Assembly: GCF_032191835.1 (NCBI RefSeq)
Contig: NC_083234.1
Span: 55,924,001-55,988,000, forward strand
DNA length: 64,000 nt
Origin: Heteronotia binoei
Lineage: Eukaryota
Direction of reading: 5' to 3'
A model generated the notes under the pieces. It was not told the origin of the DNA. It worked only from the letters and a program-made list of their open reading frames with translations, and made no database searches. Both the position numbers and the translations under genes were made by a program. This document shows, piece by piece, positions 42 to 59,220 of this stretch (positions are counted from its first letter, which is position 1; every line of letters begins with the position of its first letter).

Positions 42-13364
<13,323 letters not shown>

Positions 13365-13508: not shown

Positions 13509-17480
<3,972 letters not shown>

Positions 17481-19385: not shown

Positions 19386-19961
19386 TTAATTTCCTTGAGT
19401 GCCCATAAGAGTTTTGGTATTATGTGAAAAGTGAAAAAGTACTTTTTTCCTGTTTTCTCTATCCCATACATAATTTTGTAAACCCCTGTCATGTCACCCC
19501 TCCATTGTCATTTCTCCATGCCTGAAAGCACTAACCTCTTTAGCCTTTCTTTAGCCTTTAACTAAAGAAAGGCTTCACCCTCCAACTTGCATAGCAAAAG
19601 TTTTAAGCTGATGGTCACAGAACATGAGCCAAGACATAAAAAGTCAATTACCTGAACAGGCACCATTTCAAGTTTTGGTATGGAGAGAACAAAGATTTCA
19701 TAGTAGGGATGCAATTGAGCAAGTCCCAACCATCTGATCTCAGCCCTGAATGATAGATATACTGATGTTTCTGGCTTTTGTGTTGCAGTTGGCTGTTTTT
19801 AAAAACCTAATTAAAAACTTGGAAATATACATCTCATCTTCTCCACAATTTTTCATTTTAAAAAAGCATATTTTATGAAAATTTGTTGCAATCCTTTTAT
19901 AATATGACTATACTCATGATAGTATTGTTTATTTCTTTTCCCTCCAAGTGCATCTGGGAAA

Positions 19962-22900
19962 ATGAATAACAGGTATTTTGGAAAGTGCAGTTCCTAAAGG
20001 CACTTGGGGGGGCACACAGGCTACAGTTGTAAGCATTCTAGAAAAAATAAATCTTATGGGAGGAGTGTGTGTGAAACATCTGGGCCTAAATCAGGGGTGT
20101 CAAACATGAGGCCCAGGGGACAGAACCAGCCCATCCAGGGCTCTTGCACAGTCCACAAGCAACAGGTATGTATGGAAATGTATTCCCCCTTTTATGGTAT
20201 CCCTTGGGAAAAGCCTAGTCTTCCATATGCTTAAATACATTTATTGGGGCTTTTGTGGGTTCCCCAGTAAATCAATTGCTTTCACTGCTAGTAATGAATT
20301 GTTTTTGTTTGTATTTGAGTAAAAATTAATATTGCTAATTGGGTTTGCCTGCATCATTTATAAAGTTTATATCTCCGGTACCTGGCATTCCATTCCATGG
20401 CACATATGGCCTGGTCCAATGAAGTGACATTTATATAAGAACCAGCCCTTGAAACAAAGGAGCTTGAGACTCCTGGCCTAATTGGTTATCTGAAGCTGTA
20501 GCACTTTTGTCTTCAAAAGTATGCACATGTAGTCATAGCAACCCAAGAACTAGCACCGAGGGTACTTCCTCATTCATGGTCACTACAAAAACAGACAATC
20601 TGCTGTCCGTAAGAAATATGTAGCATTCTTACAGGGCTCTCAAATGTTCAAAGAACACCTAATACATACACTACCTTATTGCAATCCTTTAAACAGCTCT
20701 AATGCTTCAGTGGGGAGGGCGGGATATAAATTAAATAAATAATGGTCAGTATTATTATGTGCATCCCCTAAAACATTCCTCAAAGTCTGTTCACAACACA
20801 CAGGGGTTATACTCAAGACACACAGATGTTCCTTGAACACATGTACAAAGGATAACCTAAAGACAAAGTCTGAAAGGCACCTGCTTAAAGAGAAAATACA
20901 TAGTACTTTAATGTGAAGGGCTTCTTAAGCATTGTGCTTTAAAGTGAAGGGCTTCTCAGCTTGCTGGAGCTATTCCTTATACAAGAGTTTCCACAGCAAA
21001 CTTTTTGCAGCTTTGCTGGTTGTCTTTGTGGAAATTCCACTTAATTAATTTCTTCATAATGATGTTCTTCAGGTCTGTTGGAATGGGGGACAGGAAAAAA
21101 AATAAATGTGCATTCTTCACCTGCCAACTCCTGCAAGTCCCAAGGAGAAAGACTAATACTTTTCTTCATCACTGGGATTCATCATTAAAAGTGAAGCCAA
21201 GGAGACATACAATGCAGCCCTAGACAAAGTTCCTTCCACTAGAGGCAATGGAGTTAATTGGAGTAAATCTGCATAGGACCACACTATTAAATTCATGTAC
21301 GCTAAAGTGCAATGCTGTATATTCTAATCCATGCCACCCCACCCACCTTGTTCAGCAAACAAAGGTCCTCCAAAATTTGACAAATCAGGCTGCTGCCTAT
21401 CAAAGCTCATGCAGCGATTAATGAAATCGGAGAGTTCTTAGGTTCTGCCTTTTGCTGCTGACTATTCAAACAGGCAGTCTTTTAACTGCTTGGATTTAAC
21501 AATGCTGATCTTACTCTACTCGCAAAGGAACTACATATTTGGAAAAAACTGTGCTTGGGTCTGGCAGCTTTCTCAATCTCGCAAACTACTAACTTGGAAA
21601 AGTTAACAAGTGGGGGAAGGGAAAAGATCTGCTACAGCTCCCTCTCCCATCACTTATTTTCAAGCATTTTAAAGTCACCACGAGGGCTAGAAGCTTTATA
21701 AAAATTAACCTAGATCACACTCCAGATTCTGGGCAGTCAGTAAGACAGAATCTTATAAATGCATCATCCTTTATGATTTGATCTACCCAACTGTTCCTCA
21801 GTCTTGGGAATTGAAGGATCACTTGCTCCACTATGAGTGCACTTGCCAATTAAGATCTTCTTCAGAGGTCCTGCTCAGTATAACCCCAATTTCAGGACTA
21901 AGATGGGTTCCTACAGAGACAAAGACTCCTCTATGGTGGTACTTTGTCCCCAGACCTCTCCCCCCACAGCAATTCACTTGGCCCCTAGCCTATTCGGCTT
22001 TATGTTTCTCAGGTTCCTTTGTCTTCTTTTCCTTTCTTTGATTCTTGGCCTGTTTTTAATGATTATACTGGGTCTCCTTGGCTCCTTCCACACAGCAGTG
22101 ATGCTCTCTACAGTCTTCACTGCCTTTGTGAAGAGAGAGACATTTGCAGTGGCTACTGAATATCCATACAACAGTTTTTTCCACACTACCCCCTACCATC
22201 AGAATGCATTCTTGGACTTAAAAAAGAATAATCAGTAACTGCCATTGCTACTAAATTATAACCAATTGCTGCTTTTTAACCCCCCCCCCCCAAGCCCTCT
22301 GGTTGTGGGGAGGAAATTGGTAGCTGTGGGTTGAAGAAGGAAATGTTACCCACGAGTCGGACCTGAAAAACACACCTCTTCCCATCCACGTGACATACAG
22401 ACATGACCTTTTCCAAAAGTTTATACTAAACCAGGAGTGGCCAAACTGCAGCTCAGGAACCACATGTGGCTCTTTCACACATATTGTGTGCCTCTCAGAG
22501 GTTGAGGCTTATTCTTGAGTAAGTGTGCATAGCATTGAGACCTCAGTCAGCCTCTGAGCGCTGACCCATAGGCAGGCAACTATTTCCACCATATATGAAG
22601 CAGAGAAAGAGGGGGAAATAGGCTTGCAAGCTCTTCTCCTCCACCAGAGATCACCCAGACACCTAGAGTGGGGAAAGAGAATGCAAGAGCCATGGGAGAA
22701 AAGTGAGCACATAAGGTGGCTGTGCTACCAAGTCCACTATTGAGTTTTTAAAAAAAGTGTGTGTGGTATTTGTTCATGTCTTGTAGTTTCAGAAAAAACA
22801 TCTGAAGTTTATTCTTTGTGGCTCTTACATTAAGCAAGTTTGGCCACCCCTGTACTAAACCAAGTTTGAGAAACACTGCAGCAAAGCAGAGAGAAATATG

Positions 22901-23505
22901 GAAGGTGGACCATTAGAGGGGGACAGCATGAGGACACTGCAAAAAAACAAAAACTTGCTCCACTTTAGACACCAAAGTGGAGCAAGAACTCCATGTGGGT
23001 ACATAGCCTCAGAATATTCTTACTGTTGTGCTGGTTTATTGCTATATAAAACAAACCAACAAAGCCCTACAGTCCTGTGATACACTAACTCACCCTTCTG
23101 TTTGCTCCTCCATAGGAAGATTTGAATCAGCCCTAGGAAGTGAAAAAGTAGAGAAGCGTTAAAATAGGGAAAGGATGAGGCTTCTGTTCCTTCTGGCTCT
23201 AGCAGAGGTTTGATGTGACAGGCAGCAGAGATCTATTCCGGGGAGAGAAGAAAAGGTCATTGTGAAGACTCCAATGTGGAGGGTACTGCAATTTAACAAT
23301 CAGTAGAGGGTTCTTTCTCTAGTCTCTTTTCCCTGTCAGTCTTGAAAGCTGTAAAGAAGAGCTGGCAATTCTGCATACCCTTTCTGAACAGCTGGGTATG
23401 AAACATACGGTTGGATCCCACCACTCATCAATGGAACGTGTAGATGGTTGCGAATCTTCCTCCACAAAAATTTATTTCCAGGGTCATGGAATAAATGTGA
23501 CCTAA
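19962..23505 (+). CDS. Candidate small membrane protein with putative coiled coil, 3 exons, 181 aa
   Basis: Exons 19962-19972 (within 24-nt exon 19949-19972; TTTCTTTTCCCTCCAAG / CAG|GTATTT), 21866-22234 (ATCTTCTTCAG / CA|GTAACT), 23340-23505 (TTCTTTCTCTAGTCTCTTTTCCCTGTCAG); all joins phase 2; long hydrophobic stretch LFGFMFLRFLCLLFLSLILGLFLMIILGLLG; AATAAA at 23490-23495. No homolog recognised. Confidence 0.5.
20092..20475. mobile_element. hAT MITE
   Basis: CAGGGGTGTCAAAC ... TTGAGACTCCTG, 8-bp TSD GCCTAAAT / GCCTAATT. Confidence 0.8.
22432..22852. mobile_element. hAT MITE
   Basis: CAGGAGTGGCCAAAC ... GTTTGGCCACCCCTG, perfect 8-bp TSD TACTAAAC. Confidence 0.9.
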
Positions 23506-23513
23506 CAGATGCG

Positions 23514-23812
23514 CAAGAGAGCCCCATGGCGCAGAGTGGTAAAGCTGCAAAACTGCAGTCAAACTCTGCTCACAACCTGAGTTCAATTCCAGCGGAAGCT
23601 GGGTTTGGGTAGCCAGCTCCAGGTTGACTCAGCCTTCCATCCTTCCGAGTTCGGTAAAATGAGGACCTAGCTTGCTGGAGGGAAAGTGTAGATGACTGGG
23701 GAAGGCAATGGCAAACCACCCCGTAAAAAGTCTGCCGTGAAAACGTGAAAGCAACGTCACCCCAGAGTTGAAAATGACTGGTGCTTGCACAGGGGACTAC
23801 CTTTACCTTTTT
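23514..23812 (+). mobile_element. Sauria SINE (Squam1)
   Basis: Head GAGCCCCATGGCGCAGAGTGGTAAAGCTGCA, tail GGGGACTACCTTTACCTTTTT. Confidence 0.9.
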
Positions 23813-23894
23813 AAACAAATGCACTGGTCAGTGGCCTGCAGTGGGGAAGGGGAGAGTAGAACTGTGCTAATGACACTAATTTTATCCATTTCCC

Positions 23895-23955
23895 TCAATC
23901 ACAAGGCTGATAGACCATAGGGGTCTTGCTGTCGTTGGAATAAATTTTCTCATGG
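23895..23955 (-). CDS. Novel TM gene, terminal coding exon (HEKIYSNDSKTPMVYQPCD-stop)
   Basis: Long pyrimidine tract ending TTCTTCTCCAG, phase-2 start, EKIY motif like upstream exons. An AG 13 nt upstream would instead give ILLQP-stop. Confidence 0.65.
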
Positions 23956-26900
23956 CTGGAGAAGAATGCTGAGGAGACGGGAATGCAGGAAAGATCCATG
24001 TTCCTCATGCCTGCAGACCTTGGGATCCAACCACAGTATCATGCCATTATATATATATTTTCAGTTGCTTTGTGGGAATTGGTTAGGTGTAGGTTATGTG
24101 CGGGAAGTTTGCATGTGCACAAGCACACATACACGAAACACTCAGCCCCCAGCCTTGCCAGAAACCTGTGAGCCACTTCCCCACACAGCCTCCAGTTTGG
24201 CTGGACAGCAGAATTTCCACATGTTCACAATTGCCATCAGTCACAGTTTGCCAACTGTGCAAAAGGGCAAATTTTTGTCACTTAATGCCATCAGCCTCCC
24301 TAAGTTTCTGGTATCTACAGAGTCTTACTCTACAGATGGATTCCTAGGGCGAGAGAATCTCTTCTCTACAATCTTATTTCCCCTGCTTACATAGATTCAG
24401 ACTGTGGTCCACCAATATTTGCATATGAATGCTCAGGCTGGGACCTATCAATGCTTGCATACACATGCTCCGGAGAAGGGCTGGAACACAAGGACAGGGG
24501 GAAGGAGAAAGTCTCTCTCTCTCTCTTTTTAACAACAATGCCATCATTGTAAACATAGCAAATATTTAACTATCATCGTAGATATCCCACTACCTTTACA
24601 ACATACACTTCTACATACAAGGATACACAACTCGGTGGGTCTCCAGGTAAATTCCCATTTTGAACAATCCTTCAAAGGCTAGTTCCTAGGAGTTTTAAAG
24701 TTCCTAGTTCCAAAAAGCACTCCATTACAGCAATAGTGCAGAACAACTGTACGAAAACTGTAGCAATTGATAACTGTAGGATAACTTGCACTAGCTTTTT
24801 AAGAGGGCAATGCTCTAAATTTTTGAAGATATAACTCCACACACTCTGAATGTAGTGCAGCGGAGAAAAGATGGACACATGCCAAACAATCAAGCAACAG
24901 CTTTGACAAGCCATAAAATGGCCTATTAAAAAAGTCAGAAGGAAGCCAGCATCCTATAACCAAGCTGTGTCATTTTACTTACAACCCCACCCCCCTACAG
25001 GGTCTGAACAGTCGGTCTTCCACAAAATAATTACCAGGAACAATTATTCAGTCCAAAATCTTTTAAAAATGGGGCATAATTGCCTGAAGAATCCAGTGGT
25101 GAAACATGCAAGAAAGTTCCTGGTCCAGTTCCTGGTCTCTTCAGTAAAAACCACCTCAGGCAGCAGGTGTCTGGGTAAAAAACCCAAAAAACCCCTCTCA
25201 GCATGAGACCCTGGAAAGCCACTATTTGGAAAGACTGTGGCTCAGGGGTTTAGCACTTGCTTGACGTGTAGAAGGTCCTCAGTTCTCTCTTTGGCATCTC
25301 CACTTAAAATGAGGCCATAGCTAGACTCACCGGTTGATAGAAAGTGATCAGAACAGACAATATTGAGTGAGCTGCCCCAATAATGAAGTTTCATCTGAGT
25401 GCTTCTTTTTGCTGGTAGAATGCAACTTTTTGGAGCCCCAAATTACATGCACAGCTGTGCATGATCAAGCACGCAGTGAGATCTTGAGCAGGCTTCTTAA
25501 CAAGACTGCCCCTCATCTTGTTTGCTACACTCACATAGAAAAACGTGGTGACCGTTGCACATCAGCGTAGGCCTTCTCAGGAGTGGATCTGGAATGACAA
25601 GAAACCTATTTCAAGGGCTGAAGGAGCAAAACCCCACCAATGGCAGTCAGAAACAAGACTGGGCCAAGCAAGGTAGTGAGTGGGTGGACAGTGAATTGGG
25701 CATAAACCTGCACAAGAGGAGACTGGCATGTGCACAATGGAGTTTAGTTAAATTCATTACAAAAATCCAGTGGTGGAAGCTCAGCAGCAAAGAACTTGCT
25801 TGGTGTGCAAGAAGTCTCTCCACTAATGAGGCTGTCCAAGACAACAGAAAGCTGCTGGCTATCAGAACAGACAATACTGAGTTAGAGGACCCAATAATGA
25901 AATTTCAGCGGAGTGCTTCTTTTTGCTGGTAGAATGTTAATTTTTGGAGCCACAAATTACATGCACAGCTGTGCACAGCCAAGCAGGCAGTGCACAAGTT
26001 TCTTAGCAAGACTGCTCCTTCATCTTATTTGTCAGACTCACGTAGAAAAAGCTGGTGCTCCTTGCATACTGACATAGGACTTCTCAGGAGTGGATCTGGA
26101 ATGACAAGAAACCAATTTTAAGGGCTGCAGCAGCAAGGCCCCACCAATGGCAATCAGAGCAAGACTGGGTCAAGCAGGAAATTCGCAGACACAAAATTGG
26201 GCACAAATGTGCATGAGAGCACAGTGGCATGTCAATGCTGGAATTTCATTGGATCCATTACAAGAATATAGTGGTAAATACTCAGTGGTAGAGAACCTAT
26301 TTGGTACACAAGGAGGTTCCCAGCTCAGTTCCTGGAGTCTCCAATTAAAAGGATCTCAGGGACACTCCCTGGTATCTCTAATTAAAAAGATCTCAAGAAG
26401 CAAGTGTCTGTGCGTGGGGAAAAACCTCTCTCTCATGAGAACCTGGAAAGATGCTATTTGGAGAGGCTGAAGCTCAGTGGCAGAACGGTTGCTTGATATG
26501 CAGAAAATCCCTGCTTGATCTTTGGCATCTCAACTTAAAATGAGGCTGCAGCAAGACTCTCTGTCCAAGATAACAGAAAACTGCTGGCTATCAGAATAGA
26601 CAATACTGAGTTAGAAGATCCCAACAATGAATAGACAATATTGAGTTAGAAGATCCCAATAATGAAGTTTCAACTGAGTGCTTCTTTTTGCTGGTAGAAT
26701 GTTAATTTCTGGAGCCGCAAATTACATGCACAGTTGTGCACAGTCAAGCAGGCAGTGAACAAGTCTTTCTTAGCAAGACTGCTCCTTCATCTTATTTGTC
26801 ACACTCACGTAGAAAAAGGTGGTGCTGGCTGCATACTGACGTAGGGCTTTGGAGGAGAGGATCTGGAACGACAAGAAACCAATTTTAAGGGCCGCAGAAG

Positions 26901-29900
26901 CGAGGCCCCACCAACGGCAATCAGAAACAAGACTGGGTCAAGCAGGAAATTGGCAGACACAAAGTTGGGCATAAACTGCATCTGAGAGGACAGTGGCATT
27001 CAATGCTGGAATTTCATACGATTCATTACAAGAATATAGTGGTAGATACTCAGTGGTAGAGAACCTGTTTGGTACACTGGGAGGTTCCCAGTTCAGTCCC
27101 TGGAATCTCCAGTTAAAAGGATCTCAGGGACACTCCCTGGCATCTCTAATTAAAAAGATCTCAAGAAGCAAGTGCCTTGCGGGGGTGAAAAACCTCTCTC
27201 TCATGAGAACCTGGAGAGATGCTATTTGGAGAGGCTGAAGCTCAGAGCCAGAGCACTTGCTTGACATGCAGAAAATCCCTGTTCCATCTTTGACATCTTG
27301 ACTTAAAATGAGGCCACAGCAAGACCCGCTGTCCGAAACAACAGAAAGCTACTGGCTATCAGAATAGACAAAATTGAATTAGAAGACCCCAATAATGAAG
27401 TTTTAGCTTCTTTTTGCTGGTAGAATGCTAATTTTTTGAAGCCACAAATTACGTGCACAGCTGTACACAGTTGAGAAAGCAGTGAGTTCTTGAACAAGTT
27501 TCTTAGCAAGACTGCTCCTTCATCTTATTTGTCACACTCACGTAGAAAAAGGTGATGATGGAAGCACACTGATGTAGGACTTCTCAGCAGAGGATCTGGA
27601 ATGACAAGAAACCAATTTCAAGGGCTGCAGCAGCAAGGCCCCAACAGCCATCAGAAGCAAGACTGGGTCAAGCAGGAAATTGGCAGACACAGAGTTGGGC
27701 ATAACCATGCACAAGAAGACCCCAGGATGTTGACGCTGGAATGTCATTGGATTAATTACATGCTTTTGCTTTCTCACTTGCTGCTTTTGTGTTCACAACT
27801 CCTGCCAACTGTTTTACAACCACTGTAACCGTTTTATCATGGGGTGATGATTTTCAGCCTCATTTTAATGATATTCTTTGACTTAATTTGAATTCATCAT
27901 AATTTTTGGCAGGTCTCATTGCTACTGAAGTTTGGAAAATGCACCTAGAATTTTTATGATGGAATACACAATATAAATTATCTGAAATAAGTACACATAC
28001 TACATTTTATTTATCCTTCTAAGAAAGTCTCCTAAGCATACAAACAAAACTTCACACACCAGACAAGTTGGGAGGAGACAGATGTTCCGCATCTCCACCG
28101 ATGCTGAAAACCCTGTTTTCATAAATGTCTCCATCTAATGCCATCTCTTAGGACTCTAACTAGTCATTTCTACTTCTAAGATAAGCCCCCAAAATATCCT
28201 ATGGGTCATTATATACTGTCAAGAAATTTCTCTCCCTCCCTCCCCACCATGTCTTACGTCTGGACTTGATGAACCCCTCCAGAGGTATCGAACTCATTTG
28301 TTATGAGGGCCAGATCTGACACAAATGGGATTTTGTAGGGCCGGGCAACATATGTTAAAAATGTAATGTGAGATAGCAGTAATATAAACTTTATAAAGGA
28401 CTCGATAAACACATTTAAAGATGTTATTTTTAAACTTAAAATACAAATGTGTTTAAAACTCTTGTAATATTTTGTTTAAAATGAAAAGGTGGGGGGAATA
28501 GTGGGATCCAGCAATGCAATTTTTAAAACAAAATGTCAAGAAAAAGCACAAGGATCACAGCAGAAACTAAAAATATAAAATGCTCTGAGCCTGGGAAAAC
28601 AATGAAATGGCATTGCAAGCTTCTCTCTACCCCCCCACCCCCCGGGTATACTCAGATTGGCAATGGACCTCCAATGTAATATCCTCTTTTGACTGTGGAT
28701 TCCCAGGTTAGAGTACTCATTAGGTCAGGTCCATTGAGCAGAGACAAGCTGGGTCAAAGCATCAGCCCTTTATTTGCAAGGATACAACTCCAGGAAGCAT
28801 GAGCATCAGCTGGCTATGCCCCCACCTTTCCATTTTCAACCAAATATTTCAAGAGTTTTAAGCATTATTTCATTTTATGTTAAAAATAATATCTTCAATT
28901 GTGTTTGCCTGTGTCCTTTATAAAGTGTATATCTCTGCTCCCTCCCATTACATTTTATGGCACGCGTGGCCCAGCCCCATAAAGTTCCATTTGTGTCAGA
29001 CTTGGCCCTCCTAACAAATGAGTTCGACACCCCTGTCCTAATGCAAGCAGTTGGTGGCACTGTGCCAGAGGAGAAGCGACAGAGAAACCCCTCCAAGGGT
29101 TGGATGAGCAGCACTTCTTCATACGGAGACGAAGGATGGTTGCTGGGTGCCTAAACGCTTTAGAAAGCTGAAAGGAGTTGCTCTTCTGGGTCAACAGAAC
29201 CACTCCACCACACATGCAATCAATAAATAAAATAGGAAGCACAAAAGGTTTCTTTGTGACGGGCAACTGGTAAAGTCTGAAGTGAGATGAGAATGACTGT
29301 TGATCTTTCAAAGCCTTGCTGTAGAAACTCCGGCGACATATTAAGTGGCTAGACATGCTTTTCTGTGTTAGGCTGCCAGCACACAGCTGCCAAGAGACTG
29401 ATCATTAAGGCTATGTTGCCTGGCCTGCTACCCTCTCTAAGCCAGCTATTATTTAGTTTTTCATTGCTGTCTTGACAACATGCTGAACATGTTATTTCAA
29501 TAACTGGAAATTTCAAAGACTCTGATGCCTGGGTTGCAATAGCGTCAAGTCATTCCATCCTAATTTTACTACTTATATTCCAAATAGGCAAAATAGAAAC
29601 CACTTTCTCTCACTAATAATAATAATTATTGTATGGCAGTCTGTGTAGCACAGCCAGGAGATCCTACGATTGTCTGGCAGTCGGAAGTTCTAGCTTTTAG
29701 TGTTATGTACCACTAAGTGGCGAGCTAGACTTGTTTTTATGGCAAGAGATGTTTCAGAGGTGGTTTGCCTATGCATCCTGGCCCTGGTATTCCTTGGAGG
29801 TCACCCACCCAAATACTAGCCAGGACTGACCCTGTTTAGCTTCTGAGATCTGATGCAACTGGGGTAGCCTGGGCTATCCAGGTCAGGGCACATTCTCCCA

Positions 29901-32900
29901 CTCATATCCAAGGAGGGAATCAATGCAACTTAGAGCACCTGCTTTGCATGCAGAAGACCCCAGCTTCAGTCCTTGGCCACTCCAAGCGAATGGATCTCTG
30001 GCAGAGCATGTTGGAGAAGACTGTTCTTTGCCTGAGATCCTAGAGAGTCACTGCCAGCCAGAGAAGGAGTACTGAGCCAGAGAAGGAATACTAAGGGGAG
30101 GGATGGCAGCTCAGTGGTAGAGCATCTGCTTGGTAAGCAGAAGGTCCCAGGTTCAATCCCCAGCATCTCCAACTAAAAAAGGCAAGTAGGTGTAAAAAAC
30201 CTCAGCTGGAGACAAAACACATGATCCATCTGCCTTTTGGCAGGGAAATGTAGCACATAAAGATACAGCAACAATTCCAAAAGTATTATGCCCCCAAATT
30301 CACCCAGCACCTTAATGTTCTTTCAAGCTGCGGCGAAGTTTCCTTGATGTCCCACTCCCTCCACCACCCTCATGCAGCAGTGGGCAGCAAAAGAACCATC
30401 CTCTTGCTATTTCAACTTACTTGGCTGCTTCCCCTGCTCCATCAGAACTTGGATATTTGGTCTCTGAGCGGCGTCTGAAATCACAGAAAGCACATTTCAC
30501 TGCCACGTTGCCAAATGCAATAAACACTTCTCCATGCAACTCTTGCTACTACTGAGAAAGCAGAGGGCACTTGCAGAGGGCACCAAAAATCCATGGAGTT
30601 TCCCTTGCATTTTCCTTATGTTGCCTGCCACCTCAGCCATTTTCTCTCTCCACTATCATAGGGTATTTTCTTTTTGAACTGGGCAGAGATCTACTTTTTT
30701 TTTTTTTTTACAAAAATGAAAGCTGGGGATTCAGAGGTACTGCAGACCATGGCTAACTGTGCTGCAATAATCTTGCAAATGTTAACTTTTAAAACAGCCA
30801 CGAAAAAGTTGCCTGGTGTGCATATGTGAGTGTGGAGGGGGAATGCCAGCCATGGGGGGCAGAGGAAAGGAAAATGGTGCTTCAAAAATATGCACATTCC
30901 TATCCACCTAGCATGAAAAGGCACTACCTGCAGTCTCTCCAAAAAGTTCCTTATCAGATCAGGTCAAGGGAAGACTACAGCAAAAAAACAATAAAACCAG
31001 GTTTTACCCTGAATACACAACCTCCATGTGGAAGCTACCAAATTATGCTTTTATGTCTGAGGCTAACACTATCTAACCAACGTGGTGCAGCGGTTCATTG
31101 ACAAGGATCCAGGCGATCCAGGAGACCCATGTTTGAATCCTGACTGCTACAGATTCTTGGGTGACCTTGGGCCAGTAAATGTCTCTCAACCTAACCTATC
31201 TCTTTAGGTTGCTGTGAGGATAAAACAGGAGAGAAGGACAAGCTTGTAAACCACTTTGGATCCCCACTGGGAGAAAAAACAGGGCATAAGTATCTAAAAT
31301 AAAAATAAATTCTATAATTCCAACTTGGCAGAAGGGAAAAGGGACAGTTAAAAAGGAGGCCTCTGTGTAATTGACAATAACTAAGTACCAACACAAGCAA
31401 TTGTTACTTGGAATACGATTCAGCATCCAGAGAATCCCAGCTTTCATTTAAAAGAGAAATGCATTTCTAGTCCTCACAATCATGAAAAAGAAGTTTAGAA
31501 GCACACAAGCAATGCTTTTTATAGTATCCAGAGTCAGAAGAAAAGGCAAAGGTGGGGGTTTCAGTGGATTAGATAGGTTCATGGAAGACTAGTCTATCAA
31601 TGGTTACTAGCCACAGTGACTGAGGAGAACCCCCACATTCAGAGACACTAATTGTCTGAATCCCAGAGCCAGGAAGCAACATCAGAGGAAGGCCTCTGCC
31701 TCTTTGCCCTATTGTTGGTTGGCCACTGTATGAGACAGGATCCTGGACTAGATGGGGCACTGGTCTGATTCAGCAGGGCTCTTATCTTCTTCTGCTTGTC
31801 TCCCTCATAATTAGCAAAACTAAGGGCATGCAAATCTACTTAATGAATAGAGGTCACTTTTCTGGATGTGGGAGAACCAGATCAAGGAAACAGAACAGCA
31901 TGGTCTCTAGACAACCCACAGCAACACCAATAGTGCAGACATTGTGTAATTTAAGGAGAGCAACTTGCTGGATCACGCTCACGGTCTGATTCAGCACAAG
32001 GCAGTATTCGGTTTTCGGTACTGACCAAAAGTCTGTCCCACTTCCATACCATCTAGTCTTTCCAGCTCACCTAGGACCAGGGTGCAGGTCTTTAGGATCC
32101 ACGTATGAACTCTCTGCAGCCCTAGAATGACAGAAGGGAGTCTTCAGTGTGGAACTCACAGAGAAGATGCAAAAGACCGTGTAAAACAGCTTACGATGTC
32201 CCATTTCCTTCTCTATCACTGTATAAACTATGCAGATTATTCAAGGCATAGGCTTGTAAAGAAGTTACAGACCAGCTCTGCTTAGGTTAGCCCTAAACTG
32301 TACAGAGTTTACCTCAATTACCAATCATATGGTTGAACAGAAGAAACCAACCAGAGCTAGCAATGCACTGGCCATTAGAGTCACTGGGAAAAGTCCTGGA
32401 GGGGGGCAATGGCCTGCGGACTGCCCCCTCACCAGAGCCAACCCTAGCCCAAGTGAGGGATGGCTCTCACCCTACATGGCACGAGTGGCAGCTGCCACAA
32501 ACTGGTGACCATAACAAAACCCCAAAAAGCAAAATTTACAAATAGAATATAAAACTGACCTATTATGTTTAAAGTCGCCTACATAAGAGGAAAAAGTTGG
32601 CATAAGAAAACCAAAGGCTGCCCAGCAGATGGGCAAAACTAAAACAGGAATTGGGAAGTTGGAGGTAGAAACAGCAAGGATAAGAAATTCAGAATGACCC
32701 CTAAATAGTATTAGGCAGTCCTTTTGATAACTCTGGTCCCAAGCCATAAATGACAGATTTCATAATCATAGACAATTTGAGCATACAATGTTCAGAAGCT
32801 TCTTTAACCTTTATAACCATGGGGTCAGTCAGATTAGAGAGAGCCAGTTTGGTGTAGTGGTTAAGTGCGTGGACTCTTATCTGGGAGAACTGGGTTTGAT

Positions 32901-35900: not shown

Positions 35901-38900
35901 AGGGCTCCAATGTACATGAACAAAACAGGTAGGCATCCACAATGGTGTTACCCCAAAAAGTTCTGAGTAAACCAACTAATTCCCTGATCTGCCATCGTAA
36001 GAAAGGGAAAGGGAGGTTGCTACTTCTTTCTGTATGACTATCACTTGCAGTGACCACTAGTGCCCAGTCCTAGGGGCACACGTGAGACCACAGATGAACA
36101 TAGGAAGAGCCCTGCTGGATCCGAGCGCAGGCCCCTCTACTCCAGCATCCTGTTGCCAACGATGGCCATCAAGAGACGTCCAGGATAGCTTTGAAGCTGC
36201 CTCATAGCAATGGTGTTCTGTTAAGCTCCCTTTGAACACAGAGGCTTCATTCTGTCATCATGGTCTAATAGTTGTCAACACACTTCCGTTTAAATTGGTT
36301 AATTCCACTGTTAAAGGACACAGCAGTGTACTGAAAAAAAAAAATGTTAGCAGCAGATACTGTGAGCAGCAGAGTTACAGGGCCCACAGTTCAACAGCAG
36401 AGCTAATGCCTTTCATTCAGAAGGTTCCAGATTGAATCCAGTACCTTGGGTACAAAACATGGTGGGGGGGAGATGGGCCAATGGCCTGATTCTACATAAA
36501 GCAGAGTTATATGTTCAAGAGATGCTGGCAAAAGAAGGGTATAGTTAGGGGGTCTCATCAGGAATAGCAAGACTTACAACAGGCTTCCCTCGCTGAAGAA
36601 CAGGAACATGAGCCATGACTGCACTGGGGACCAGGCCTGTAGCTGCGAGGGCGCCTGTGGGGACACAGCCCCCCCAACTTCTGGGTGAGGCCCCCTGACT
36701 TGGGGCCCCCAAACAGCCTCCAGGGCCTCTGCTGCATCCTGGAGCATAGGACAGGGGGCAGAAGCAGTCCCCAGCCTCCCCCTCCAGTTAAAAGAGCTGC
36801 GGGCCGATCAGCTGATCAGCGGGCCCTTTAACCCAGCACTGGATTCAACTGCTCCATAGCTATTGGTGCTCCTGACTTGGCTGGTGACGATGAGTCAGGG
36901 TGCACTAGGACCCAGTAGAGCAGACCCTACCAGCTGCCTGTTGTCATGGGCTGCAACTCTCTCTGGAGGTGGCAGGGATCCTCTATAAATTTTAGCAGCA
37001 TTTTTACATCTAAAAGCTTCCCCGCCACAAGTAAATGTTCCATCTGACTGCAAAACTTCCCCCTTCTAATGCATATCTGAAGCTCTTAATGTTCTTTGTA
37101 ATTCACAAGGTAAAACTCGCTCCCTCCCCCACACACGCAGGGGAAGAGCATTTCCTCTTTTAAGCCCTCCCCCACCTTCCTCGATCTCTCTAGCAGGCCA
37201 TTTATTTAGCTTCAGCTCCACAAGGCTGGTTCCTACCAAGAGAATGACTCAATGTATTTTTAAATAACAAGACACCCCGTATGTGTGTTCACTATAACTT
37301 GTGAACAGGACTTGTGTGTGTGCATGTGTGTTTGTGGTGGAAGGGGGGGGAGGGGGAAGGCTGGCAATATGCTTTCATTACAGTTATCCTGGATTTGGGT
37401 AGCAGAACTGTGATATATGGGCTTTAATTCATAGAGTTAACAACTTTGGCTGGTAAATTCCTGGATATTTTTGGTGGATCCTGAGGAAGGCAGGGAGCTC
37501 AGTGGCATGTAAAGTCAACATCCCTCCCCCCCCCCCCCCAAAAAAAAGCCATTCTGTACTGGGGAAATTATCTCTGTAGTCCAGAGAACATTTGTAATTC
37601 TGGGTGATCTCCAGGCCCCACCAGGAGGTTGGAAGCCCAATACCTTGGGAGTAAACCCACTGAATAAGAGGACTAAAGGTAGTTCTGCTTTCCATTGCTT
37701 CAGGTGACCATCCTGTAGTTTGCTTTAATTTTCACACACCCCCGCCCTCCCAACTTTGTTATTCCAAGGAAGTTTCCCATCCAAATACTTGCCAGAGCAA
37801 TTTCAAGTTTTTGAAAATTGGTTATTTGGGGGGGTGGGGGCAGTAGGGAGTTTGAGTGTTCTGGGAACAGAAACAGATTTGGGTGGGTAGCAACGCTGGT
37901 CTGAAGTAATAGAACAAAATAGAACAAAATTTGAGTCCGGTGGCTCCTTTAAGGCCAACAAAGTTTAATCCTGGCACCAGCCAGTGTGATGGTAGGTCAG
38001 GGTGGCCATGAGAGCAGCTATGGATTGGGGCCCTTGAGTGCCCCCCCAAAAATCAAAGGCCCCCTGACCTTCCAAATTCTGGATACGTGGCTGCTGGGGA
38101 CCCACTACAGGGATGGAGGTGGGGTGGCGGCTGATGTAGCAAAACACAGGGAAAAGGAAGGCCCCTGATTTTGAGGCCTCCAATGACTCACCATTGTTTG
38201 TTCATCAAGCGCAGGATGACAACTGCCACCAGCAGCAGAACCAATGTGGAGAAGAAACCCAAGAAGGCCAAGGAGCCTATGATAGCCACCAGCGTACTCT
38301 TGCTCAACACCTCAGGGCAAATGCATGTTGTTTGTGTTGCTATGAAAGAAAGGGGAAGGCCACATGAGAAATCATTCTCCTGAATTCCCAAGCCTTTCCT
38401 TCCAGCAGGGAAGCCAGTTAAAACTCTTCAAGATTTTAGTCACTAATTTCCTGTCTCCACATGACTCCCAGGCAACATAGAGCATTTACCCCCAAATCAA
38501 CTTGCTCTCCTCTTAGCCACATCTCACGCCCACCCCCAGAACCCCACCTACCTCACCTCCATAGTCAAACGACTGATTCTGGAAATGAAAGATGTCTTAC
38601 TTGGTAGTAAGGCCTGCCGGTTCCCAACTGACACCTCGCCGGAATCTTCAGGGTACTATGGGTGATAAAACTGAGTAAGTTCATGATCTTGTTTTGGTTC
38701 CAAGCAACACATCTCCATGGCCAAACATGAATGACCAGTTCAAACTCTGGCATAATTTATTTAAAACATTTAAATGCCATCTTTTCACTCAGTACAGGGT
38801 CAAAACATTAAAACAAATTTTAAAATACTTATCTATAAAATGACAAGAACAGTGTAACAAAACACAAACGTGTAGACACATACACTTAAAGATGAAGGAC

Positions 38901-43208: not shown

Positions 43209-46200
43209 TCAGCTGCAGCTCTTGGGCAGCCGGTAGACACCACCAGAGTAGATGAGCTGCTGATCTCGGACCTTCTTCTGGAGGAAACACTGCAGCTCCT
43301 GGATGTCAATCTCTGTCACCATGGGGCCTGTCATCACAAAGATCTTGAGCATGCTGTGGATGCGCTCCAGTGACAGACTCTCTAGATTCGTCAGCATTGC
43401 CTGGATGTAAGTCCAGAAAAGCTGCAGGGTACACCAAAGGAGAAATTAAAAAAAATAGATGCTGTAGATTATGGTGCATACACAAGAGGGCTGTGCAGTG
43501 CACCAATTATACCCTCTCACTTGGAATCCTAGCACCATTTATGAAACATACAATTTCCCTAAAAACATGCATACTGTGTATGCTCTGATATGCTATTATT
43601 ATTATAATATGCTATTATTAGACCAGCACTGAAAACAAGTTCTCAATCTCAACCATGGTTCAAATTAAACCTTGTTTAGAAAAAGAGACATCACATTCTG
43701 TCCCAAAAGCTCACTCTGGAAAGGCACCAGCATCTATAACTTCATTCAGCCAGAAAATCCTGAATGCTTATGTTTGGAATATGCTACCTGGGGAGGGACA
43801 GTGGCTCAGTGGTAGAGCATCTGCTTGGGAAGCAGACGGTCCCAGGTTCAATCCCTGGCATCTCCAAAAAAGGGTCCAGGCAAATAGGTGTGAAAAACCT
43901 CAGCTTGAGACCCTGGAGAGCCGCTGCCAGTCTGAGAAGACAATACTGACTTTGATGGACCAAGGGTCTGATTCAGTATAAGGCAGCTTCATATGTTCAT
44001 ATGTACCTTGAATAAATTATATATAAAGCAAGACATGAATGTCTGAGGCTTTGCAGAATGTATCCAAACTGAAGAATCTACCTTTACTTGGCATGCAACC
44101 AGATGGCATACTTGGCATGTAACTGGAAGGCGCAGGCTGCACGCCAGCTGAGCTTTAGAACCTGCCTGCAGTTGATTCAAGAAAGAAATCATCCCCTGCC
44201 CCACGTAACTACAGCTCTGAGAGCACAAGAGCAGTACCTGCAACTCCTCCTCCTTCTGGTCAGCTTGCGAGGCCATGGCTGAATCGCCTTCTTCATCGCT
44301 GTCAATCAGCACCACTTTCTCTGCCCGGTCCTTCTGTTCCTCTTCAATCACAGTGAATGTGCCTGGAGGCTCCTCCCGCAGCACACCTTGCTGCAGCCAC
44401 AGGGTCATCTTGCGCCGGAGGGATGTCACAGGAACCTTCAGCACCTCACTCAGCTCATCCAGAGTCCACGTGCCTGAGAAGAGTTCAAAGGCGAAAAGTG
44501 TTACAAGGAAAACAGTCAGGAGCAAGGAATATGTTTTGGGGGGAGGGGGAGATCAGAACAGGGCACAGCTCATCAGTGGTGAGGCACAGGTATGCCGGAA
44601 GGGTTGGGAAAAATCCTCTAGCTGAGATCATAGAGAGCAGTTGCTAGTAAGGATGGCTATAGAATAAAGGACCAGGCAGATCAAATGATCTGTGGAAAGC
44701 AATGACTTACAAACAAATCACAATATGTTTCACACTTTTATAGAACACCCTCTAAGTCTGGATCATCTACTCTCAATACACCCCACTCCCGTCCAAAGCC
44801 TTTTCCTAAATCAACAGAGCAGGGGTCCCCAAGATGCCCACCTACATGTTTCCTAGTGCTCATCAAGTGTTTCCAGAAGTGGGTGGGGCTAGGTGGGCCT
44901 TCTACCCAGCAGAGCTTCTGATTAGCTAATGGACATTTGATTGGATGTACAAAACATTTTTAAGATGTTGGTTTGACAGCAGCTGCCACCACAGCGCAAG
45001 AATTGTTGCCATGTGACTGAAAGTAAGCTACAGCATTTTGTGGCTGGCTACATTTCTTGTGACAACCCTTTTGTGATTGTGCCCACCACCCTGTGTCAGA
45101 ATTCCAAAACTGTCCACAGACTCAAAAAGACTGGAGACCCCTGCAGTAGAGTCTCTTCCATGTTGTGCCACAGGTAAACCCACTGCTGCGCAGCAACAGC
45201 TGCAACCACTTCCTCCCAGCAGAGGGCAGCAGTGTATAGCCGCTATAGAGAAGTGGACTCACTCTTGCTTTGGAAGTGCAAGATGATTGCTGCATGCACC
45301 GGGGAGACAGAGAGGGAAAGGGTGCGGTCTGCCAACTCCAAATCCAGTTTCACCAAGCCCAGATGGTGCTTCCAGTTCAGCGTCCTCATAGCCTAAGAAC
45401 AACCAGGCAGAAGGGGATACTCAGCAACCTGCCCCTCATGCTGCATCAACAGAAGAAAGGGAGGGAACTGGGAAAGGCAAAAGCAAGCGCAGCACCTGAT
45501 CTCTGCCCCCTTCCCAGAGACATCAGCTGCCTAGTGTAACAAAGTAATTGGTTCCCTAGTCCTTACTGCTATAGTCTTGAGCAAAGCAAAATTTCATGTG
45601 CATGTGCAATTACCATTGGGAAATATGATGCCAAGGAACTGAGAGTTGGTAGCTACTGCAAGTAGCAGAGGAAGATGTAGGCAGTGTAAACGGAAGATGG
45701 CCAGTTGGAAAATTTGTGACTTCAATATGTCCTGCAGACTGCCTATCTATCTGATACAACATCATCCTGGCTTTCCTTCCAAGAACTCAGGGCAGTGTAC
45801 ATGATCCTCCCCCCACCCTGCTCCATATTATCCCCATGACAAGCTTGTGAGGTAAGTTAGACTGAGAATGGGCCCAAGGTCATCCAGCAAGCTTCAAAGG
45901 TGAACAGGGAATAAGAACCTGTATCTCCTCATTCACTCTGAGAGCTACATCAACCTGGCCTCTATCAGTACACCATCTATTTATTGAAGAACAGAGGTCC
46001 ACAGCAAAACAGGGACAGCTAAGTCTCCATCACATCTCAGGACCACAAGGCAAAGACCCCAAATCAACATTTCAAGGGGAGATTTTTGAGCATTAAGCCT
46101 GGCTATTCAATTAAAAACTTCTACCCAACCCCCGATGGATTTAGAGGCTACAGACAGTGAGCCTACTGCCCCCTCCAGACTGCCTCGCTGACCTTTAGTT

Positions 46201-58200: not shown

Positions 58201-59220
58201 ATTTTAAGGTAGATGCTGAGTGATATAATTTAGTACACCTTCTGGTGATGTCAGGGGTGTGTGGCATATGCAAATAAGTTGTGCTATTGAGCTTCAGCAC
58301 CTCTTTTTCTATGAAATGACTCCTGCATTATCTTCAGAGAGGCATAATCCATATCATTCCAAAGTGGACAGCAAAGTCTCAAGCACCTGTCTTCTGGAGA
58401 AGAAATAAGGACTTAAACATTTTTGAATAGCCTTACACTTTACATGGACTCTATTCTCTCTGTGCTACTGACAAGTTTGTTATATAATATTATTAGGATG
58501 ATTTAGTTTTGAAATATTAGTACAGTGCTTTAGTTATTTACATTCAATGACTTTTGTTTTATTATAATCTCTACACCATGAATCTCTCTTTGTTTGATAC
58601 CTCTAGACACTACAAAGCCTCTCACCTCAAAAGGCTCTGGGGTACCAGTGAAGGGGAGCAACTTGCTAATTATTTCATTTTGTTACTGTTCAGACTTTTA
58701 TATTTATAACTATGGAGCCTCATTTGTGCTTCTTCACTACTAGTACAATTGCGGCCTGTTTTACTTACCACCAACCAGAAACATCATGTGCTAATTGCAT
58801 CAAATACAGAGACGTCCCTTCTATCCCACCACCTTAAAAATATGAATCCCATGACCCCACCACCACCACCACCTTTTCTGGGTCAACAGACTTCACCTGG
58901 TAAGTAAATTTCCCTCGCCCTCCACGCCCCCAATTGTCCTGCCGAAAGCCACTCCCTGCTCATTCCAGGGAGGTCCTGTCTGCCCCTATCCCGAGTTGAC
59001 CCGCCCCCATCGGGTTGCCTTCTTTGTCTTTTGGACCCTATTTGTGCGTCCCCTTAACTCTCCCCCAAATACACCTGGAGGCCCCCTCCCCTCCATATGC
59101 GAACTGCAACCCCCTAACCCGCTTCCCCCGTTTTGTGCCCCGTTCTCCACCTACCAGACCGAGGGCAGCGGGCGGTACTAGGCCGGTGCTAAGCGTGTGC
59201 CAGGCGGCCGAGAGCTCCAT
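43209..59220 (-). CDS. ANAPC2: Anaphase-promoting complex subunit 2, 13 exons, 807 aa
   Basis: Exons 59155-59220, 56478-57106, 54494-54626, 52937-53111, 51427-51546, 50061-50178, 49637-49818, 48517-48658, 47184-47259, 46193-46396, 45263-45392, 44238-44473, 43209-43421; sum 2424 nt, all GT-AG. Cullin-homology sequences (RLLHPGVNTSDIITLYISAIKALRELDPS; DIISLLVSIYGSKDLFINEYR; LLKLRFGEAQMHYCEVMLK) and winged-helix C-terminus (LESLSLERIHSMLKIFV). Confidence 0.97.
43790..44003 (+). mobile_element. Squam3-like tRNA-derived SINE, near full length, antisense in ANAPC2 intron 12
   Basis: A/B boxes in GGCTCAGTGGTAGAGCATCTGC...GGTTCAATCCCTGGCATCTCC, body GAGACCCTGGAGAGCCGCTGCCAGTC, tail GGCAGCTTCATATGTTCATATG. 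Confidence 0.85.
44820..45143. mobile_element. hAT MITE in ANAPC2 intron 11
   Basis: CAGGGGTCCCCAA ... TGGAGACCCCTG, TSD CAACAGAG / CAGTAGAG (6 of 8). Confidence 0.75.
47540..47729. repeat. Perfect 2 x 95-bp tandem duplication in ANAPC2 intron 8
   Basis: GCACTGGTGCTCTTGC...CAGTCATCATCGC at 47540-47634 and 47635-47729, no mismatch seen. Confidence 0.9.
54980..55280 (-). mobile_element. Sauria SINE (Squam1) in ANAPC2 intron 2
   Basis: AAAGGTAAAGGTAGTCC...CCACTCTGTGCCACGGGGCTCTT. Confidence 0.9.
57965..58157. mobile_element. hAT MITE (TIR CAGTGTTCCCTCTAAGCTG)
   Basis: TIRs and perfect 8-bp TSD GATGGGAG. Confidence 0.9.

What the first reader, a model, noticed from the sequence alone, without database searches (positions are those of the whole stretch)
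25200..27780. Tandem array in which each SINE-bearing repeat unit contributes one 54-nt tyrosine exon
Seen in sequence: four diverged units (periods 507, 767, 733 bp). Their intronic parts have indels (1-nt frameshifts just upstream of the acceptor, a 35-bp internal duplication, a large deletion), yet each keeps the acceptor GGTTTCTTGTC(A/G)TTCCAG, an exon of exactly 54 nt, the Tyr codon and a GTGAGT donor. The residues around the Tyr diverge: YISV, YVSM, YVSM, YADV. Each unit also contains plus-strand decayed Squam3-like SINE pieces. Inference: unequal crossover, possibly seeded by SINE homology, is multiplying signalling motifs, with frame and Tyr preserved while SH2 specificity diversifies. 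Copy number may be polymorphic, and because the exons are symmetric any subset can be skipped, allowing a combinatorial splicing code.
Basis: partly seen in the sequence, partly recalled or inferred. Interest (0 to 1): 0.88.

Follow-up and report, generated by a model that had tools for sequence, protein, structure and literature searches.

The report
Expressed four-copy tyrosine exon array
A gecko gene for an uncharacterised membrane protein carries one 54-base tyrosine-coding exon copied four times in a row, and RNA reads show all four copies spliced into the message; it is a clean, real case of exon duplication, which is a well-known process.

Summary
Four minus-strand 54-nt exons (27595-27542, 26862-26809, 26095-26042, 25588-25535) sit in a 4-unit tandem array (about 25085-27760; periods 507/767/733). 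This unit occurs nowhere else in the 2.63-Gb genome.

RNA-seq reads of one run splice E0-E1-E2-E3-E4 exactly at the predicted GT..AG sites (352, 124 and 94 junction reads). So the exons are real and the array is not an assembly artefact.

The gene is a squamate-only family of "uncharacterized LOC" single-pass membrane proteins. It lies next to ANAPC2 and is only weakly TMEM210-like. Its tail is built of short phase-1 tyrosine exons and ends in HxYEE(V/I).

E1-E4 are paralogues of one ancestral exon ("exon A"), which is single-copy and 54 nt in Podarcis, Pantherophis and Sceloporus. Podarcis has independently amplified the neighbouring exon B.

- The SINEs are Squam2, not Squam3.
- The founding junction is not a SINE-SINE crossover.
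- The exons are no more conserved than their introns; only the splice flanks are.
- Units are 9-24% diverged, so a copy-number polymorphism is unlikely.
- The only skipping shown is en-bloc skipping of E2-E4, not combinatorial skipping.

The phosphotyrosine function is inferred.

The parts
25085..27760 (-). Tandem array of four units (U4, U3, U2, U1 from low to high coordinate). Each unit holds one 54-nt exon plus intron with Squam2 SINE pieces.
   Evidence: Self-BLAST, alignment A1, edges. Only 4 copies in the genome.
27542..27595 (-). Exon E1, 54 nt, phase 1-1, SSAEKSYISVLPSSPFS
   Evidence: Joined to E2 by 352 reads and to upstream exon E0 by 256 loose-end reads.
26809..26862 (-). Exon E2, 54 nt, SSPPKPYVSMQPAPPFS
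   Evidence: Joints 26862>27542 (352 reads) and 26095>26809 (124 reads).
26042..26095 (-). Exon E3, 54 nt, STPEKSYVSMQGAPAFS. The RNA animal carries 26060 C>G (Gly to Ala).
   Evidence: 166 of 166 reads carry the variant.
25535..25588 (-). Exon E4, 54 nt, STPEKAYADVQRSPRFS
   Evidence: Joint 25588>26042 (94 reads). Joined onward to 23132 (73 reads) or 24480 (7 reads).
30421..30474 (-). Upstream exon E0, 54 nt, RRSETKYPSSDGAGEAA. Orthologous to the 'YQ' exon of the family, not a member of the array.
   Evidence: Loose-end consensus maps here with 1 mismatch. Only 2-3 of 17 residues identical to exon A.
24391..24480 (-). Minor cassette exon, 90 nt, two motifs (HVYASI, HSYANI). Equivalent to 'exon B' of the family.
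   Evidence: Joint 24480>25535, 7 reads. Sequence. Compared with alignment A4.
23094..23132 (-). Major downstream exon d1, 39 nt, ADSNLPMEEQTE
   Evidence: Loose-end consensus of 73 reads (from E4) and 26 reads (from E1) maps here exactly.
21041..21074 (-). Predicted last coding exon, PEEHHYEEIN followed by a stop. This is the family's conserved C-terminus.
   Evidence: In frame with d1. Not covered by the reads laid.
38192..38339 (-). Transmembrane exon (CICPEVLSK + TM helix) of the same gene
   Evidence: HMMER hits to 13 squamate proteins, E 7e-18 to 4e-6.
26281..26690 (+). Squam2 partial copy (head plus about one third of the body, with an internal repeat), directly followed by a full Squam2. 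Antisense to the gene. Contains the 35-bp duplication at 26594-26666.
27049..27410 (+). The same Squam2 pair in the next unit
25085..25400 (+). The same Squam2 pair at the low-coordinate edge of the array
25765..25891 (+). A single hybrid Squam2 (start of copy a fused to copy b) at the U4|U3 junction. This is the roughly 255-bp 'large deletion'.

Best explanation
This is an expressed tandem exon amplification. A segment of about 0.75 kb was duplicated to four copies. It holds one 54-nt, phase 1-1 exon ('exon A' of a squamate-specific single-pass membrane protein gene lying downstream of ANAPC2), its flanking intron and a pair of antisense Squam2 SINEs.

Shown:
- All four copies kept their splice sites and frame.
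- They are spliced consecutively (E0-E1-E2-E3-E4-d1) into the mRNA, adding three extra 18-residue modules, each with one tyrosine, to the tail.
- A minority of transcripts skip E2-E4 as a block.

Inferred history:
- The first duplication was a non-homologous event with one breakpoint at the 5' edge of a SINE.
- Later copies arose by unequal crossing-over between whole units. The order of origin by intron divergence is U4 first, then U1, then U2/U3.
- One unit later lost about 255 bp by recombination between its two adjacent SINE heads.

Inferred function:
- The tail is cytoplasmic, and the tail is a phosphotyrosine/SH3 docking scaffold. It carries PPxP-rich, YxxM, YxN and C-terminal YEE(V/I) motifs.
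- More exon-A copies would therefore mean more docking sites, and these have drifted apart (YISV, YVSM, YVSM, YADV).
For: Array anatomy. The unit is unique to this locus.

RNA (run X23): GT..AG joints 26862>27542 (352 reads), 26095>26809 (124), 25588>26042 (94) and 24480>25535 (7). Loose ends from E4 (73 reads) and E1 (26 reads) map to 23132, and those from E1 upstream (256 reads) map to 30421-30474. Intron bins have a depth of about 0-1.

Gene family: the TM exon hits 13 squamate proteins, all 'uncharacterized'. In Gekko kuhli the homologue also lies downstream of ANAPC2. The C-terminal HHYEEIN matches the family's HIYEEVE.

E1-E4 share 7-8 of 17 residues with exon A of Rhineura and Podarcis, against 2-3 of 17 for E0. 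Exon A is one 54-nt phase-1 exon in Podarcis, Pantherophis and Sceloporus.

Splice flanks (30 nt up plus 40 nt down) diverge by 0.068, against 0.20 for the rest of the intron, P=1.6e-4.

Founding junction and SINE deletion. Divergence order.
Against: At nucleotide level the exons are no more conserved than the introns (0.238 versus 0.176). dN/dS is about 1 on very small counts. The absence of indels in 54 columns is not significant by itself (expected about 1.3). Within-array selection on the peptide is therefore not demonstrated.

Read depth falls across the array. Bin means are 138, 93, 48 and 36 for E1 to E4, and the listed alternative joints do not explain this.

Expression was seen in one of two transcriptome runs of a coded organism whose tissue is unknown. 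No protein, phosphorylation or binding data exist. The link to a named family (TMEM210) is below Pfam's threshold. The array could not be examined in a second gecko genome, because L005 stops at its edge.
Confidence: 0.85

Rival explanations
1. Neutral exon stutter. The exons are spliced and translated, but the extra copies are selectively neutral padding of a disordered tail. Only the splice signals and the reading frame are maintained (a frame-breaking copy would be harmful), and there is no gain or diversification of signalling.
For: Exon divergence is equal to or greater than intron divergence, and dN/dS is about 1. Podarcis carries a frame-broken fourth copy of its own amplified exon, which is left out of the gene models. 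This suggests turnover by birth and death.
Against: Tyr, the residue after it and the C-terminal F-S of exon A are kept in the four copies and across squamates. Exon A has stayed 54 nt in four distant lineages. Tyrosine exons were amplified independently in at least two lineages, and probably three.
Confidence: 0.3
2. Unequal crossover seeded by SINE homology, a copy number that is polymorphic today, and free combinatorial skipping of any subset of the four exons.
For: SINEs lie in every unit, and one unit's length change is a SINE-SINE recombination. All exons are phase 1-1, so any subset would stay in frame. E2-E4 are skipped together in about a quarter of the reads that enter d1. Three reads join the E3 donor back to the E2 acceptor.
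Against: The high-coordinate edge of the array has no SINE, and the junction shows at most 1-2 nt of microhomology. Units are 9-24% diverged with identical runs of at most 55 bp, which is a poor substrate for recurrent crossover. No E1-E3, E1-E4 or E2-E4 joint reached 3 reads. No variant at 10% or more was seen in E1 or E2 that would betray extra copies.
Confidence: 0.12
3. Assembly artefact or unexpressed pseudo-exons. The array is a mis-assembled repeat, or the open frames are chance features of a repeat.
For: Two of three frames are open in all four copies, so an open frame alone is weak evidence.
Against: Hundreds of RNA reads from an independent animal cross each exon-exon junction in the assembled order. 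The four exons differ by 18-30%, so they cannot be collapsed or expanded copies of one.
Confidence: 0.02

Closest known systems
Tandem exon duplication in animal genes (the general phenomenon; established knowledge, e.g. surveys by Letunic, Copley & Bork 2002 and Kondrashov & Koonin 2001)
   Same: Adjacent exons of identical length and phase with recognisable sequence similarity, produced by local segmental duplication that includes intron sequence.
   Different: Many described cases are spliced in a mutually exclusive way. Here all four copies are included consecutively, lengthening the protein. The introns are still alignable and carry SINEs.
Squamate 'uncharacterized protein LOC...' family (e.g. 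Varanus XP_044295684, Sceloporus XP_042334433, Pantherophis LOC117676649, Podarcis CAI5794566, Gekko kuhli KAL8174255)
   Same: The CxCPEVL(A/S)KGTL + TM exon (54-89% identity). The position next to ANAPC2. The same order of short tyrosine exons and the HxYEE(V/I) C-terminus.
   Different: The other species examined have one exon A, while this gecko has four. Podarcis (3-4 copies) and Rhineura (2 motifs) amplified exon B instead. In this window's gecko the gene seems unannotated, and the G. kuhli model is truncated at 142 aa.
TMEM210 (Pfam PF15195; a testis-enriched mouse gene, dispensable for fertility, PMC9226692)
   Same: A weak but repeated match of the CxC + TM segment to profile positions 3-50 in 8 of 10 family members. 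From memory, human TMEM210 also neighbours ANAPC2; this was not tested here.
   Different: All scores are below the gathering cut-off (best 17.5 bits against 27; the window exon scores 11.5 bits, E 0.45). A profile search found no bridging sequences. The long tyrosine tail has no counterpart in the Pfam model.
Receptor and adaptor tails encoded by strings of short exons with one Tyr motif each, e.g. PECAM-1 exons 9-16 or CD3-zeta ITAM exons, and transmembrane adaptors such as LAT, PAG and SIT (established knowledge)
   Same: A modular tail in which short symmetric exons each carry one tyrosine motif. Cassette skipping changes the motif set: snake and Vipera isoforms differ by exactly 18 aa.
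   Different: There is no sequence homology. E1-E4 do not fit the ITIM consensus, because position -2 is Lys. The function is untested.
Squam2 SINE and Squam2-derived tandem repeats (sSat2) of geckos (PMC10702118)
   Same: The intronic SINEs match Squam2. The 'head plus one third of the body' copy placed directly before a full copy resembles the 139-nt sSat2 monomer arrangement.
   Different: The repeat unit here is about 0.75 kb of mostly non-SINE intron plus an exon. It is not a SINE-derived satellite.

Membership tests
Tandem exon duplication | Adjacent exons of equal length and phase with significant sequence similarity | tested here: met
   Four exons of 54 nt, phase 1-1, 70-82% identical, in units alignable at E=0.
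Tandem exon duplication | The copies are used as exons in mRNA | tested here: met
   Junction reads: 352, 124 and 94.
Tandem exon duplication, mutually exclusive subtype | Only one copy is included per transcript | tested here: not met
   Reads join E1-E2, E2-E3 and E3-E4 consecutively.
Squamate uncharacterized TM-protein family (LOC123028202-like) | Homologous CxCPEVL + transmembrane exon | tested here: met
   phmmer E 7e-18 to 4e-6 against 13 representatives, all squamate.
Squamate uncharacterized TM-protein family (LOC123028202-like) | C-terminal HxYEE(V/I) and the same order of tail exons, including a 54-nt exon A | tested here: met
Squamate uncharacterized TM-protein family (LOC123028202-like) | Position immediately downstream of ANAPC2 | tested here: met
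   In the window, ANAPC2 ends near 43.2 kb. In G. kuhli locus L005, ANAPC2 lies upstream. Other species were not checked.
TMEM210 (PF15195) | Score at or above Pfam's gathering cut-off (27 bits) | tested here: not met
   11.5 bits for the window exon. Best family member 17.5 bits; 8 of 10 members match weakly.
Squam3 SINE | Similarity to the Squam3 consensus | tested here: not met
   The array pieces do not match the in-window Squam3 copies, and the consensus differs.
Squam2 SINE | Similarity to the Squam2 consensus (tRNA-like head plus body) | tested here: met
   The consensus text was compared by eye. Alignment to the in-window Squam2-type copies gives hits of 60-77% identity over 80-166 nt.
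ITIM/ITSM motifs | (S/I/V/L/T)xYxx(I/V/L) | tested here: not met
   Position -2 is Lys in all four exons.
Phosphotyrosine docking adaptor (works like LAT, PAG or SIT) | Tail tyrosines are phosphorylated and bind SH2 proteins | not testable with these tools
   Only motif resemblance: YVSM (YxxM type), YANI (YxN type), YEEI (Src SH2 type). This is inference.

The most novel reading that the evidence does not exclude
The tail of this squamate-only membrane protein is a hot spot of recurrent, lineage-specific tyrosine-exon amplification: exon A x4 in this gecko, exon B x3-4 in Podarcis and x2 in Rhineura. On this reading, selection for more and different docking sites drives the amplification, for example in a fast-evolving reproductive or immune signalling pathway. 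Exon copy number would then act as an evolutionary dial on signalling strength.
Probability: 0.2. Interest if true: 0.65.

Novelty: new member of a known kind. Interest (0 to 1): 0.5.

Why it matters
This is a well-resolved natural example of how a signalling-type tail grows. A whole intron-exon-intron unit is duplicated, the splice flanks are held constant, and the coding part drifts. The result is visibly used in mRNA.

It also exposes a gene family, restricted to squamates as far as these searches reach, that is annotated only as "uncharacterized". The family is missing or truncated in gecko annotations, and its tyrosine exons have been amplified independently in different lineages. That makes it a good system for asking whether motif number in adaptor tails is adaptive.

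It does not reveal a new mechanism.

Tried and rejected
- A direct search for RNA runs holding the array listed none. Runs were found through the neighbouring tubulin gene instead.
- Pfam on ten minus-strand ORFs gave only sub-threshold hits.
- Squam3 identity of the SINEs was rejected.
- I tested for remnant nucleotide homology between the units and the other tail exons (E0, 32121, 33506, the 90-nt exon, d1). Scores were within or barely above shuffles. In-register similarity at the acceptor of E0 and of 32121 is suggestive only.
- dN/dS among the four exons is uninformative, with 1.5-4 synonymous changes per pair.
- Looking for the array in Gekko kuhli failed. The fetched locus ends at the position matching window ~27690, the array's upstream edge. 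No other gecko protein was found to anchor a further locus.
- The Rhineura isoform is not on record for DNA.
- A profile search meant to bridge to TMEM210 found nothing new.
- A literature search for tandem exon duplication combined with tyrosine tails found nothing relevant.
- I did not search with the spliced E0-E4 peptide, because it has no reference and would have had to be typed.
Full report
**1. The observation**

The sites are 25589, 26096, 26863 and 27596, which gives periods of 507, 767 and 733 bp. The gene is therefore on the minus strand.

Each site is followed by 54 nt that are open in phase 1 and by a GTGAGT donor. The exons are:
- E1, 27595-27542, SSAEKSYISVLPSSPFS
- E2, 26862-26809, SSPPKPYVSMQPAPPFS
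- E3, 26095-26042, STPEKSYVSMQGAPAFS
- E4, 25588-25535, STPEKAYADVQRSPRFS

Self-BLAST and a MAFFT alignment show four homologous units over about 25187-27760. The alignment contains the reported indels. These include a 35-bp tandem duplication at 26594-26666 and a block of about 255 bp missing at the U4|U3 junction. A search of the whole 2.63-Gb assembly with the exon plus about 120 bp on either side finds only these four copies.

**2. Are they exons?**

No RNA run was listed for the array itself. I therefore found runs through the neighbouring beta-tubulin gene and laid four of them on window 23800-29799.

One transcriptome run, X23 (raw reads), gives sharp exon-sized peaks and joints with CT..AC ends, which read GT..AG on the minus strand, exactly at the predicted borders:
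- 26862>27542: 352 reads
- 26095>26809: 124 reads
- 25588>26042: 94 reads
- 24480>25535: 7 reads

Intron bins have a depth of about 0-1. The second transcriptome run, X24, is almost silent here.

The loose ends could be placed in the window:
- Those upstream of E1 (256 reads) map to another 54-nt phase-1 exon, E0, at 30474-30421.
- Those downstream of E4 (73 reads) map to a 39-nt exon, d1, at 23132-23094.
- The same downstream sequence is also attached directly to E1 in 26 reads, so E2-E4 can be skipped together.

The four exons differ from each other by 18-30%, and an independent animal's reads cross every junction in the assembled order. The array is therefore not an assembly artefact.

**3. 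Pattern of conservation**

They are not.
- Mean pairwise divergence is 0.238 in the exon and 0.176 in the aligned intron.
- 23% of intronic 54-column windows are at least as diverged as the exon.
- The stretch around and after the Tyr codon is among the most variable parts of the unit.
- dN/dS ranges from 0.7 to 2.6 on 1.5-4 synonymous changes per pair, so it is uninformative.
- The lack of indels in 54 columns is not significant by itself, given about 17 internal gap runs in about 730 columns.

What is conserved is the splice neighbourhood. The 30 nt before the acceptor and the 40 nt after the donor diverge by 0.068, against 0.20 for the rest of the intron (P=1.6e-4).

At protein level the four copies keep S1, K5, Y7, P14, F16 and S17.

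**4. The SINEs and the origin of the array**

The plus-strand SINE pieces are real, but they are Squam2. They align to better-preserved copies at 43790 and 30095. They also match the Squam2 consensus printed in supplement file 6 of PMC10702118. The Squam3 consensus (PMC7983390 supplement) is different, and genuine Squam3 copies lie elsewhere in the window.

Each long unit carries a partial Squam2 (head plus about a third of the body) directly followed by a full Squam2, both antisense to the gene.

The unit-to-unit junction reads ATTACA|AGAAT. The low-coordinate edge of the array starts at the 5' end of the first SINE. The high-coordinate edge runs from ATTACA into unrelated sequence with no SINE. 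The founding duplication was therefore not a SINE-SINE crossover. It looks non-homologous, with at most 1-2 nt of microhomology.

The short unit (507 bp) has a single hybrid SINE in which the start of copy a is fused to copy b. That is a deletion by recombination between the two adjacent SINE heads.

Intron Jukes-Cantor distances are:
- U2-U3: 0.10
- U1 to U2 or U3: 0.16-0.17
- U4 to the others: 0.27-0.29

The longest identical runs are 23-55 bp. Orthologous non-coding DNA of Gekko kuhli is 74-88% identical to the window. The first duplication is thus about as old as that species split, and the later ones are younger. Units this diverged are poor substrates for ongoing unequal crossover.

**5. 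The gene**

The window holds a beta-tubulin gene (13.5-16.8 kb, minus strand), ANAPC2 (43.2-59 kb, minus strand) and SSNA1 (about 62 kb, plus strand).

The transmembrane exon at 38339-38192 finds 13 cluster representatives, with E from 7e-18 to 4e-6. Twelve are squamate proteins named 'uncharacterized' or 'hypothetical'; the remaining one, P0002, is an unnamed transcript-assembly sequence. One of the twelve is a truncated Gekko kuhli model that also lies just downstream of ANAPC2.

Pfam TMEM210 matches 8 of 10 family members at the same segment, but below threshold (best 17.5 bits against a cut-off of 27). A profile search found no bridging sequences.

Family members share an ordered tail:
- PPRPEHTY
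- YLSASELHPGPR
- a 'YQ' exon
- exon A, with the pattern P-E-x-E-Y-I ... F-S
- exon B, with the pattern PPLxKxYxNxD
- a 39-nt exon
- ...HIYEEVE at the C-terminus

In the window, E0 is the YQ exon. The 90-nt minor exon at 24480-24391 is exon B and carries two motifs. d1 is the 39-nt exon. A last exon at 21074-21041 encodes PEEHHYEEIN followed by a stop.

E1-E4 share 7-8 of 17 residues with exon A of Rhineura and Podarcis, whereas E0 shares 2-3. Exon A is a single 54-nt phase 1-1 exon in Podarcis (L006 23406-23459), Pantherophis and Sceloporus. The gecko array is therefore a four-fold amplification of an exon whose length has been stable across squamates.

**6. Parallels in relatives**

Podarcis lilfordi has its own tandem array, but of exon B. 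It holds 45-nt exons at L006 27469, 27758 and 28937, plus a 44-nt frame-broken copy at 28011. The introns are AT-rich, and one annotated isoform lacks one copy.

Snake isoforms differ by exactly 18 residues, which is exon B as a cassette. A Vipera isoform lacks the 18-residue YLSVNE exon. Modular cassette use of tail exons is thus a property of the family. In this gecko's sample, however, only block skipping of E2-E4 was seen. No E1-E3, E1-E4 or E2-E4 joint reached three reads.

**7. What remains open**

- Depth falls from E1 to E4 (bin means 138, 93, 48, 36), and the joint counts fall in parallel. The listed alternative junctions do not account for this. Ambiguous placement of reads among similar exon ends may contribute, since E3 and E4 share their first 16 nt.
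- Three reads join the E3 donor back to the E2 acceptor. This could be a back-splice, a template switch or a rare extra copy.
- The tissue of X23 is unknown.
- The docking function is inference from sequence only. It rests on YVSM as a YxxM-type motif, YANI as a YxN-type motif, YEEI as an Src-SH2-type motif and the proline-rich stretch.

**8. Verdict**

This is a real, expressed and fairly old tandem amplification of one tyrosine exon in an uncharacterised squamate membrane-protein gene. The evolutionary and splicing extrapolations are mostly not borne out. It is a new member of a known kind. The main added value is the gene family and its recurrent exon amplification.

Noticed in passing
window 19949-23505 and 21041-21074 (-): The stretch noted earlier as a separate 'second gene' is the 3' end of the same gene. 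E4 and E1 splice to 23132, and the family's conserved C-terminus (PEEHHYEEIN followed by a stop) lies at 21074-21041.
   Followed up: partly
L006 (Podarcis lilfordi) 27400-29100: An independent tandem array of the neighbouring tail exon (45 nt, SSPV(L/P)PKTYSGAGGI). There are four genomic copies, one with a 1-nt deletion that breaks the frame. The introns are AT-rich simple sequence, and one annotated isoform lacks one copy.
   Followed up: partly
proteins P0017/P0021, P0020/P0023, P0016/P0012: Snake isoforms of the family differ by exactly 18 residues, i.e. one 54-nt tyrosine exon used as a cassette.
   Followed up: partly
window 26060, 24430, 24444, about 30436: All RNA reads differ from the assembly at these exon positions. 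26060 changes Gly to Ala in E3, 24430 changes His to Arg in the 90-nt exon, and 24444 is silent. The RNA animal is therefore not the assembled individual, and coding differences are frequent.
   Followed up: no
window 26042 / 26862: Three reads join the E3 donor back to the E2 acceptor ('goes back 821'), and five reads join 26067 to 26809 on opposite strands. This could be a back-splice, a template switch between similar exons or a rare extra unit.
   Followed up: no
window 28200-29200: An inverted pair (28280-28495 and 29035-28819, 81% identical) of a very abundant repeat. Word depths of 10^3-10^4 in two metatranscriptome contig sets, and many variant letters.
   Followed up: no
window 6539(+), 18833(-), 32844(+): Genuine Squam3 SINE copies. 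Better-preserved Squam2 copies lie at 30095-30300 and 43790-44010.
   Followed up: partly
window 13512-16805 (-), 43212-59500 (-), 61893-62174 (+): A beta-tubulin (TUBB4B-like) gene, ANAPC2 and SSNA1 flank the gene. In this gecko the uncharacterised gene fills the 17-43 kb interval.
   Followed up: no
L007 (Pantherophis) about 5069-5100, versus window donors of E1-E4: The intron just after exon A starts GTGAGTGTGA ... AGATGAAG in both the snake and the gecko units. This may be a conserved splicing element, or it may be chance.
   Followed up: no
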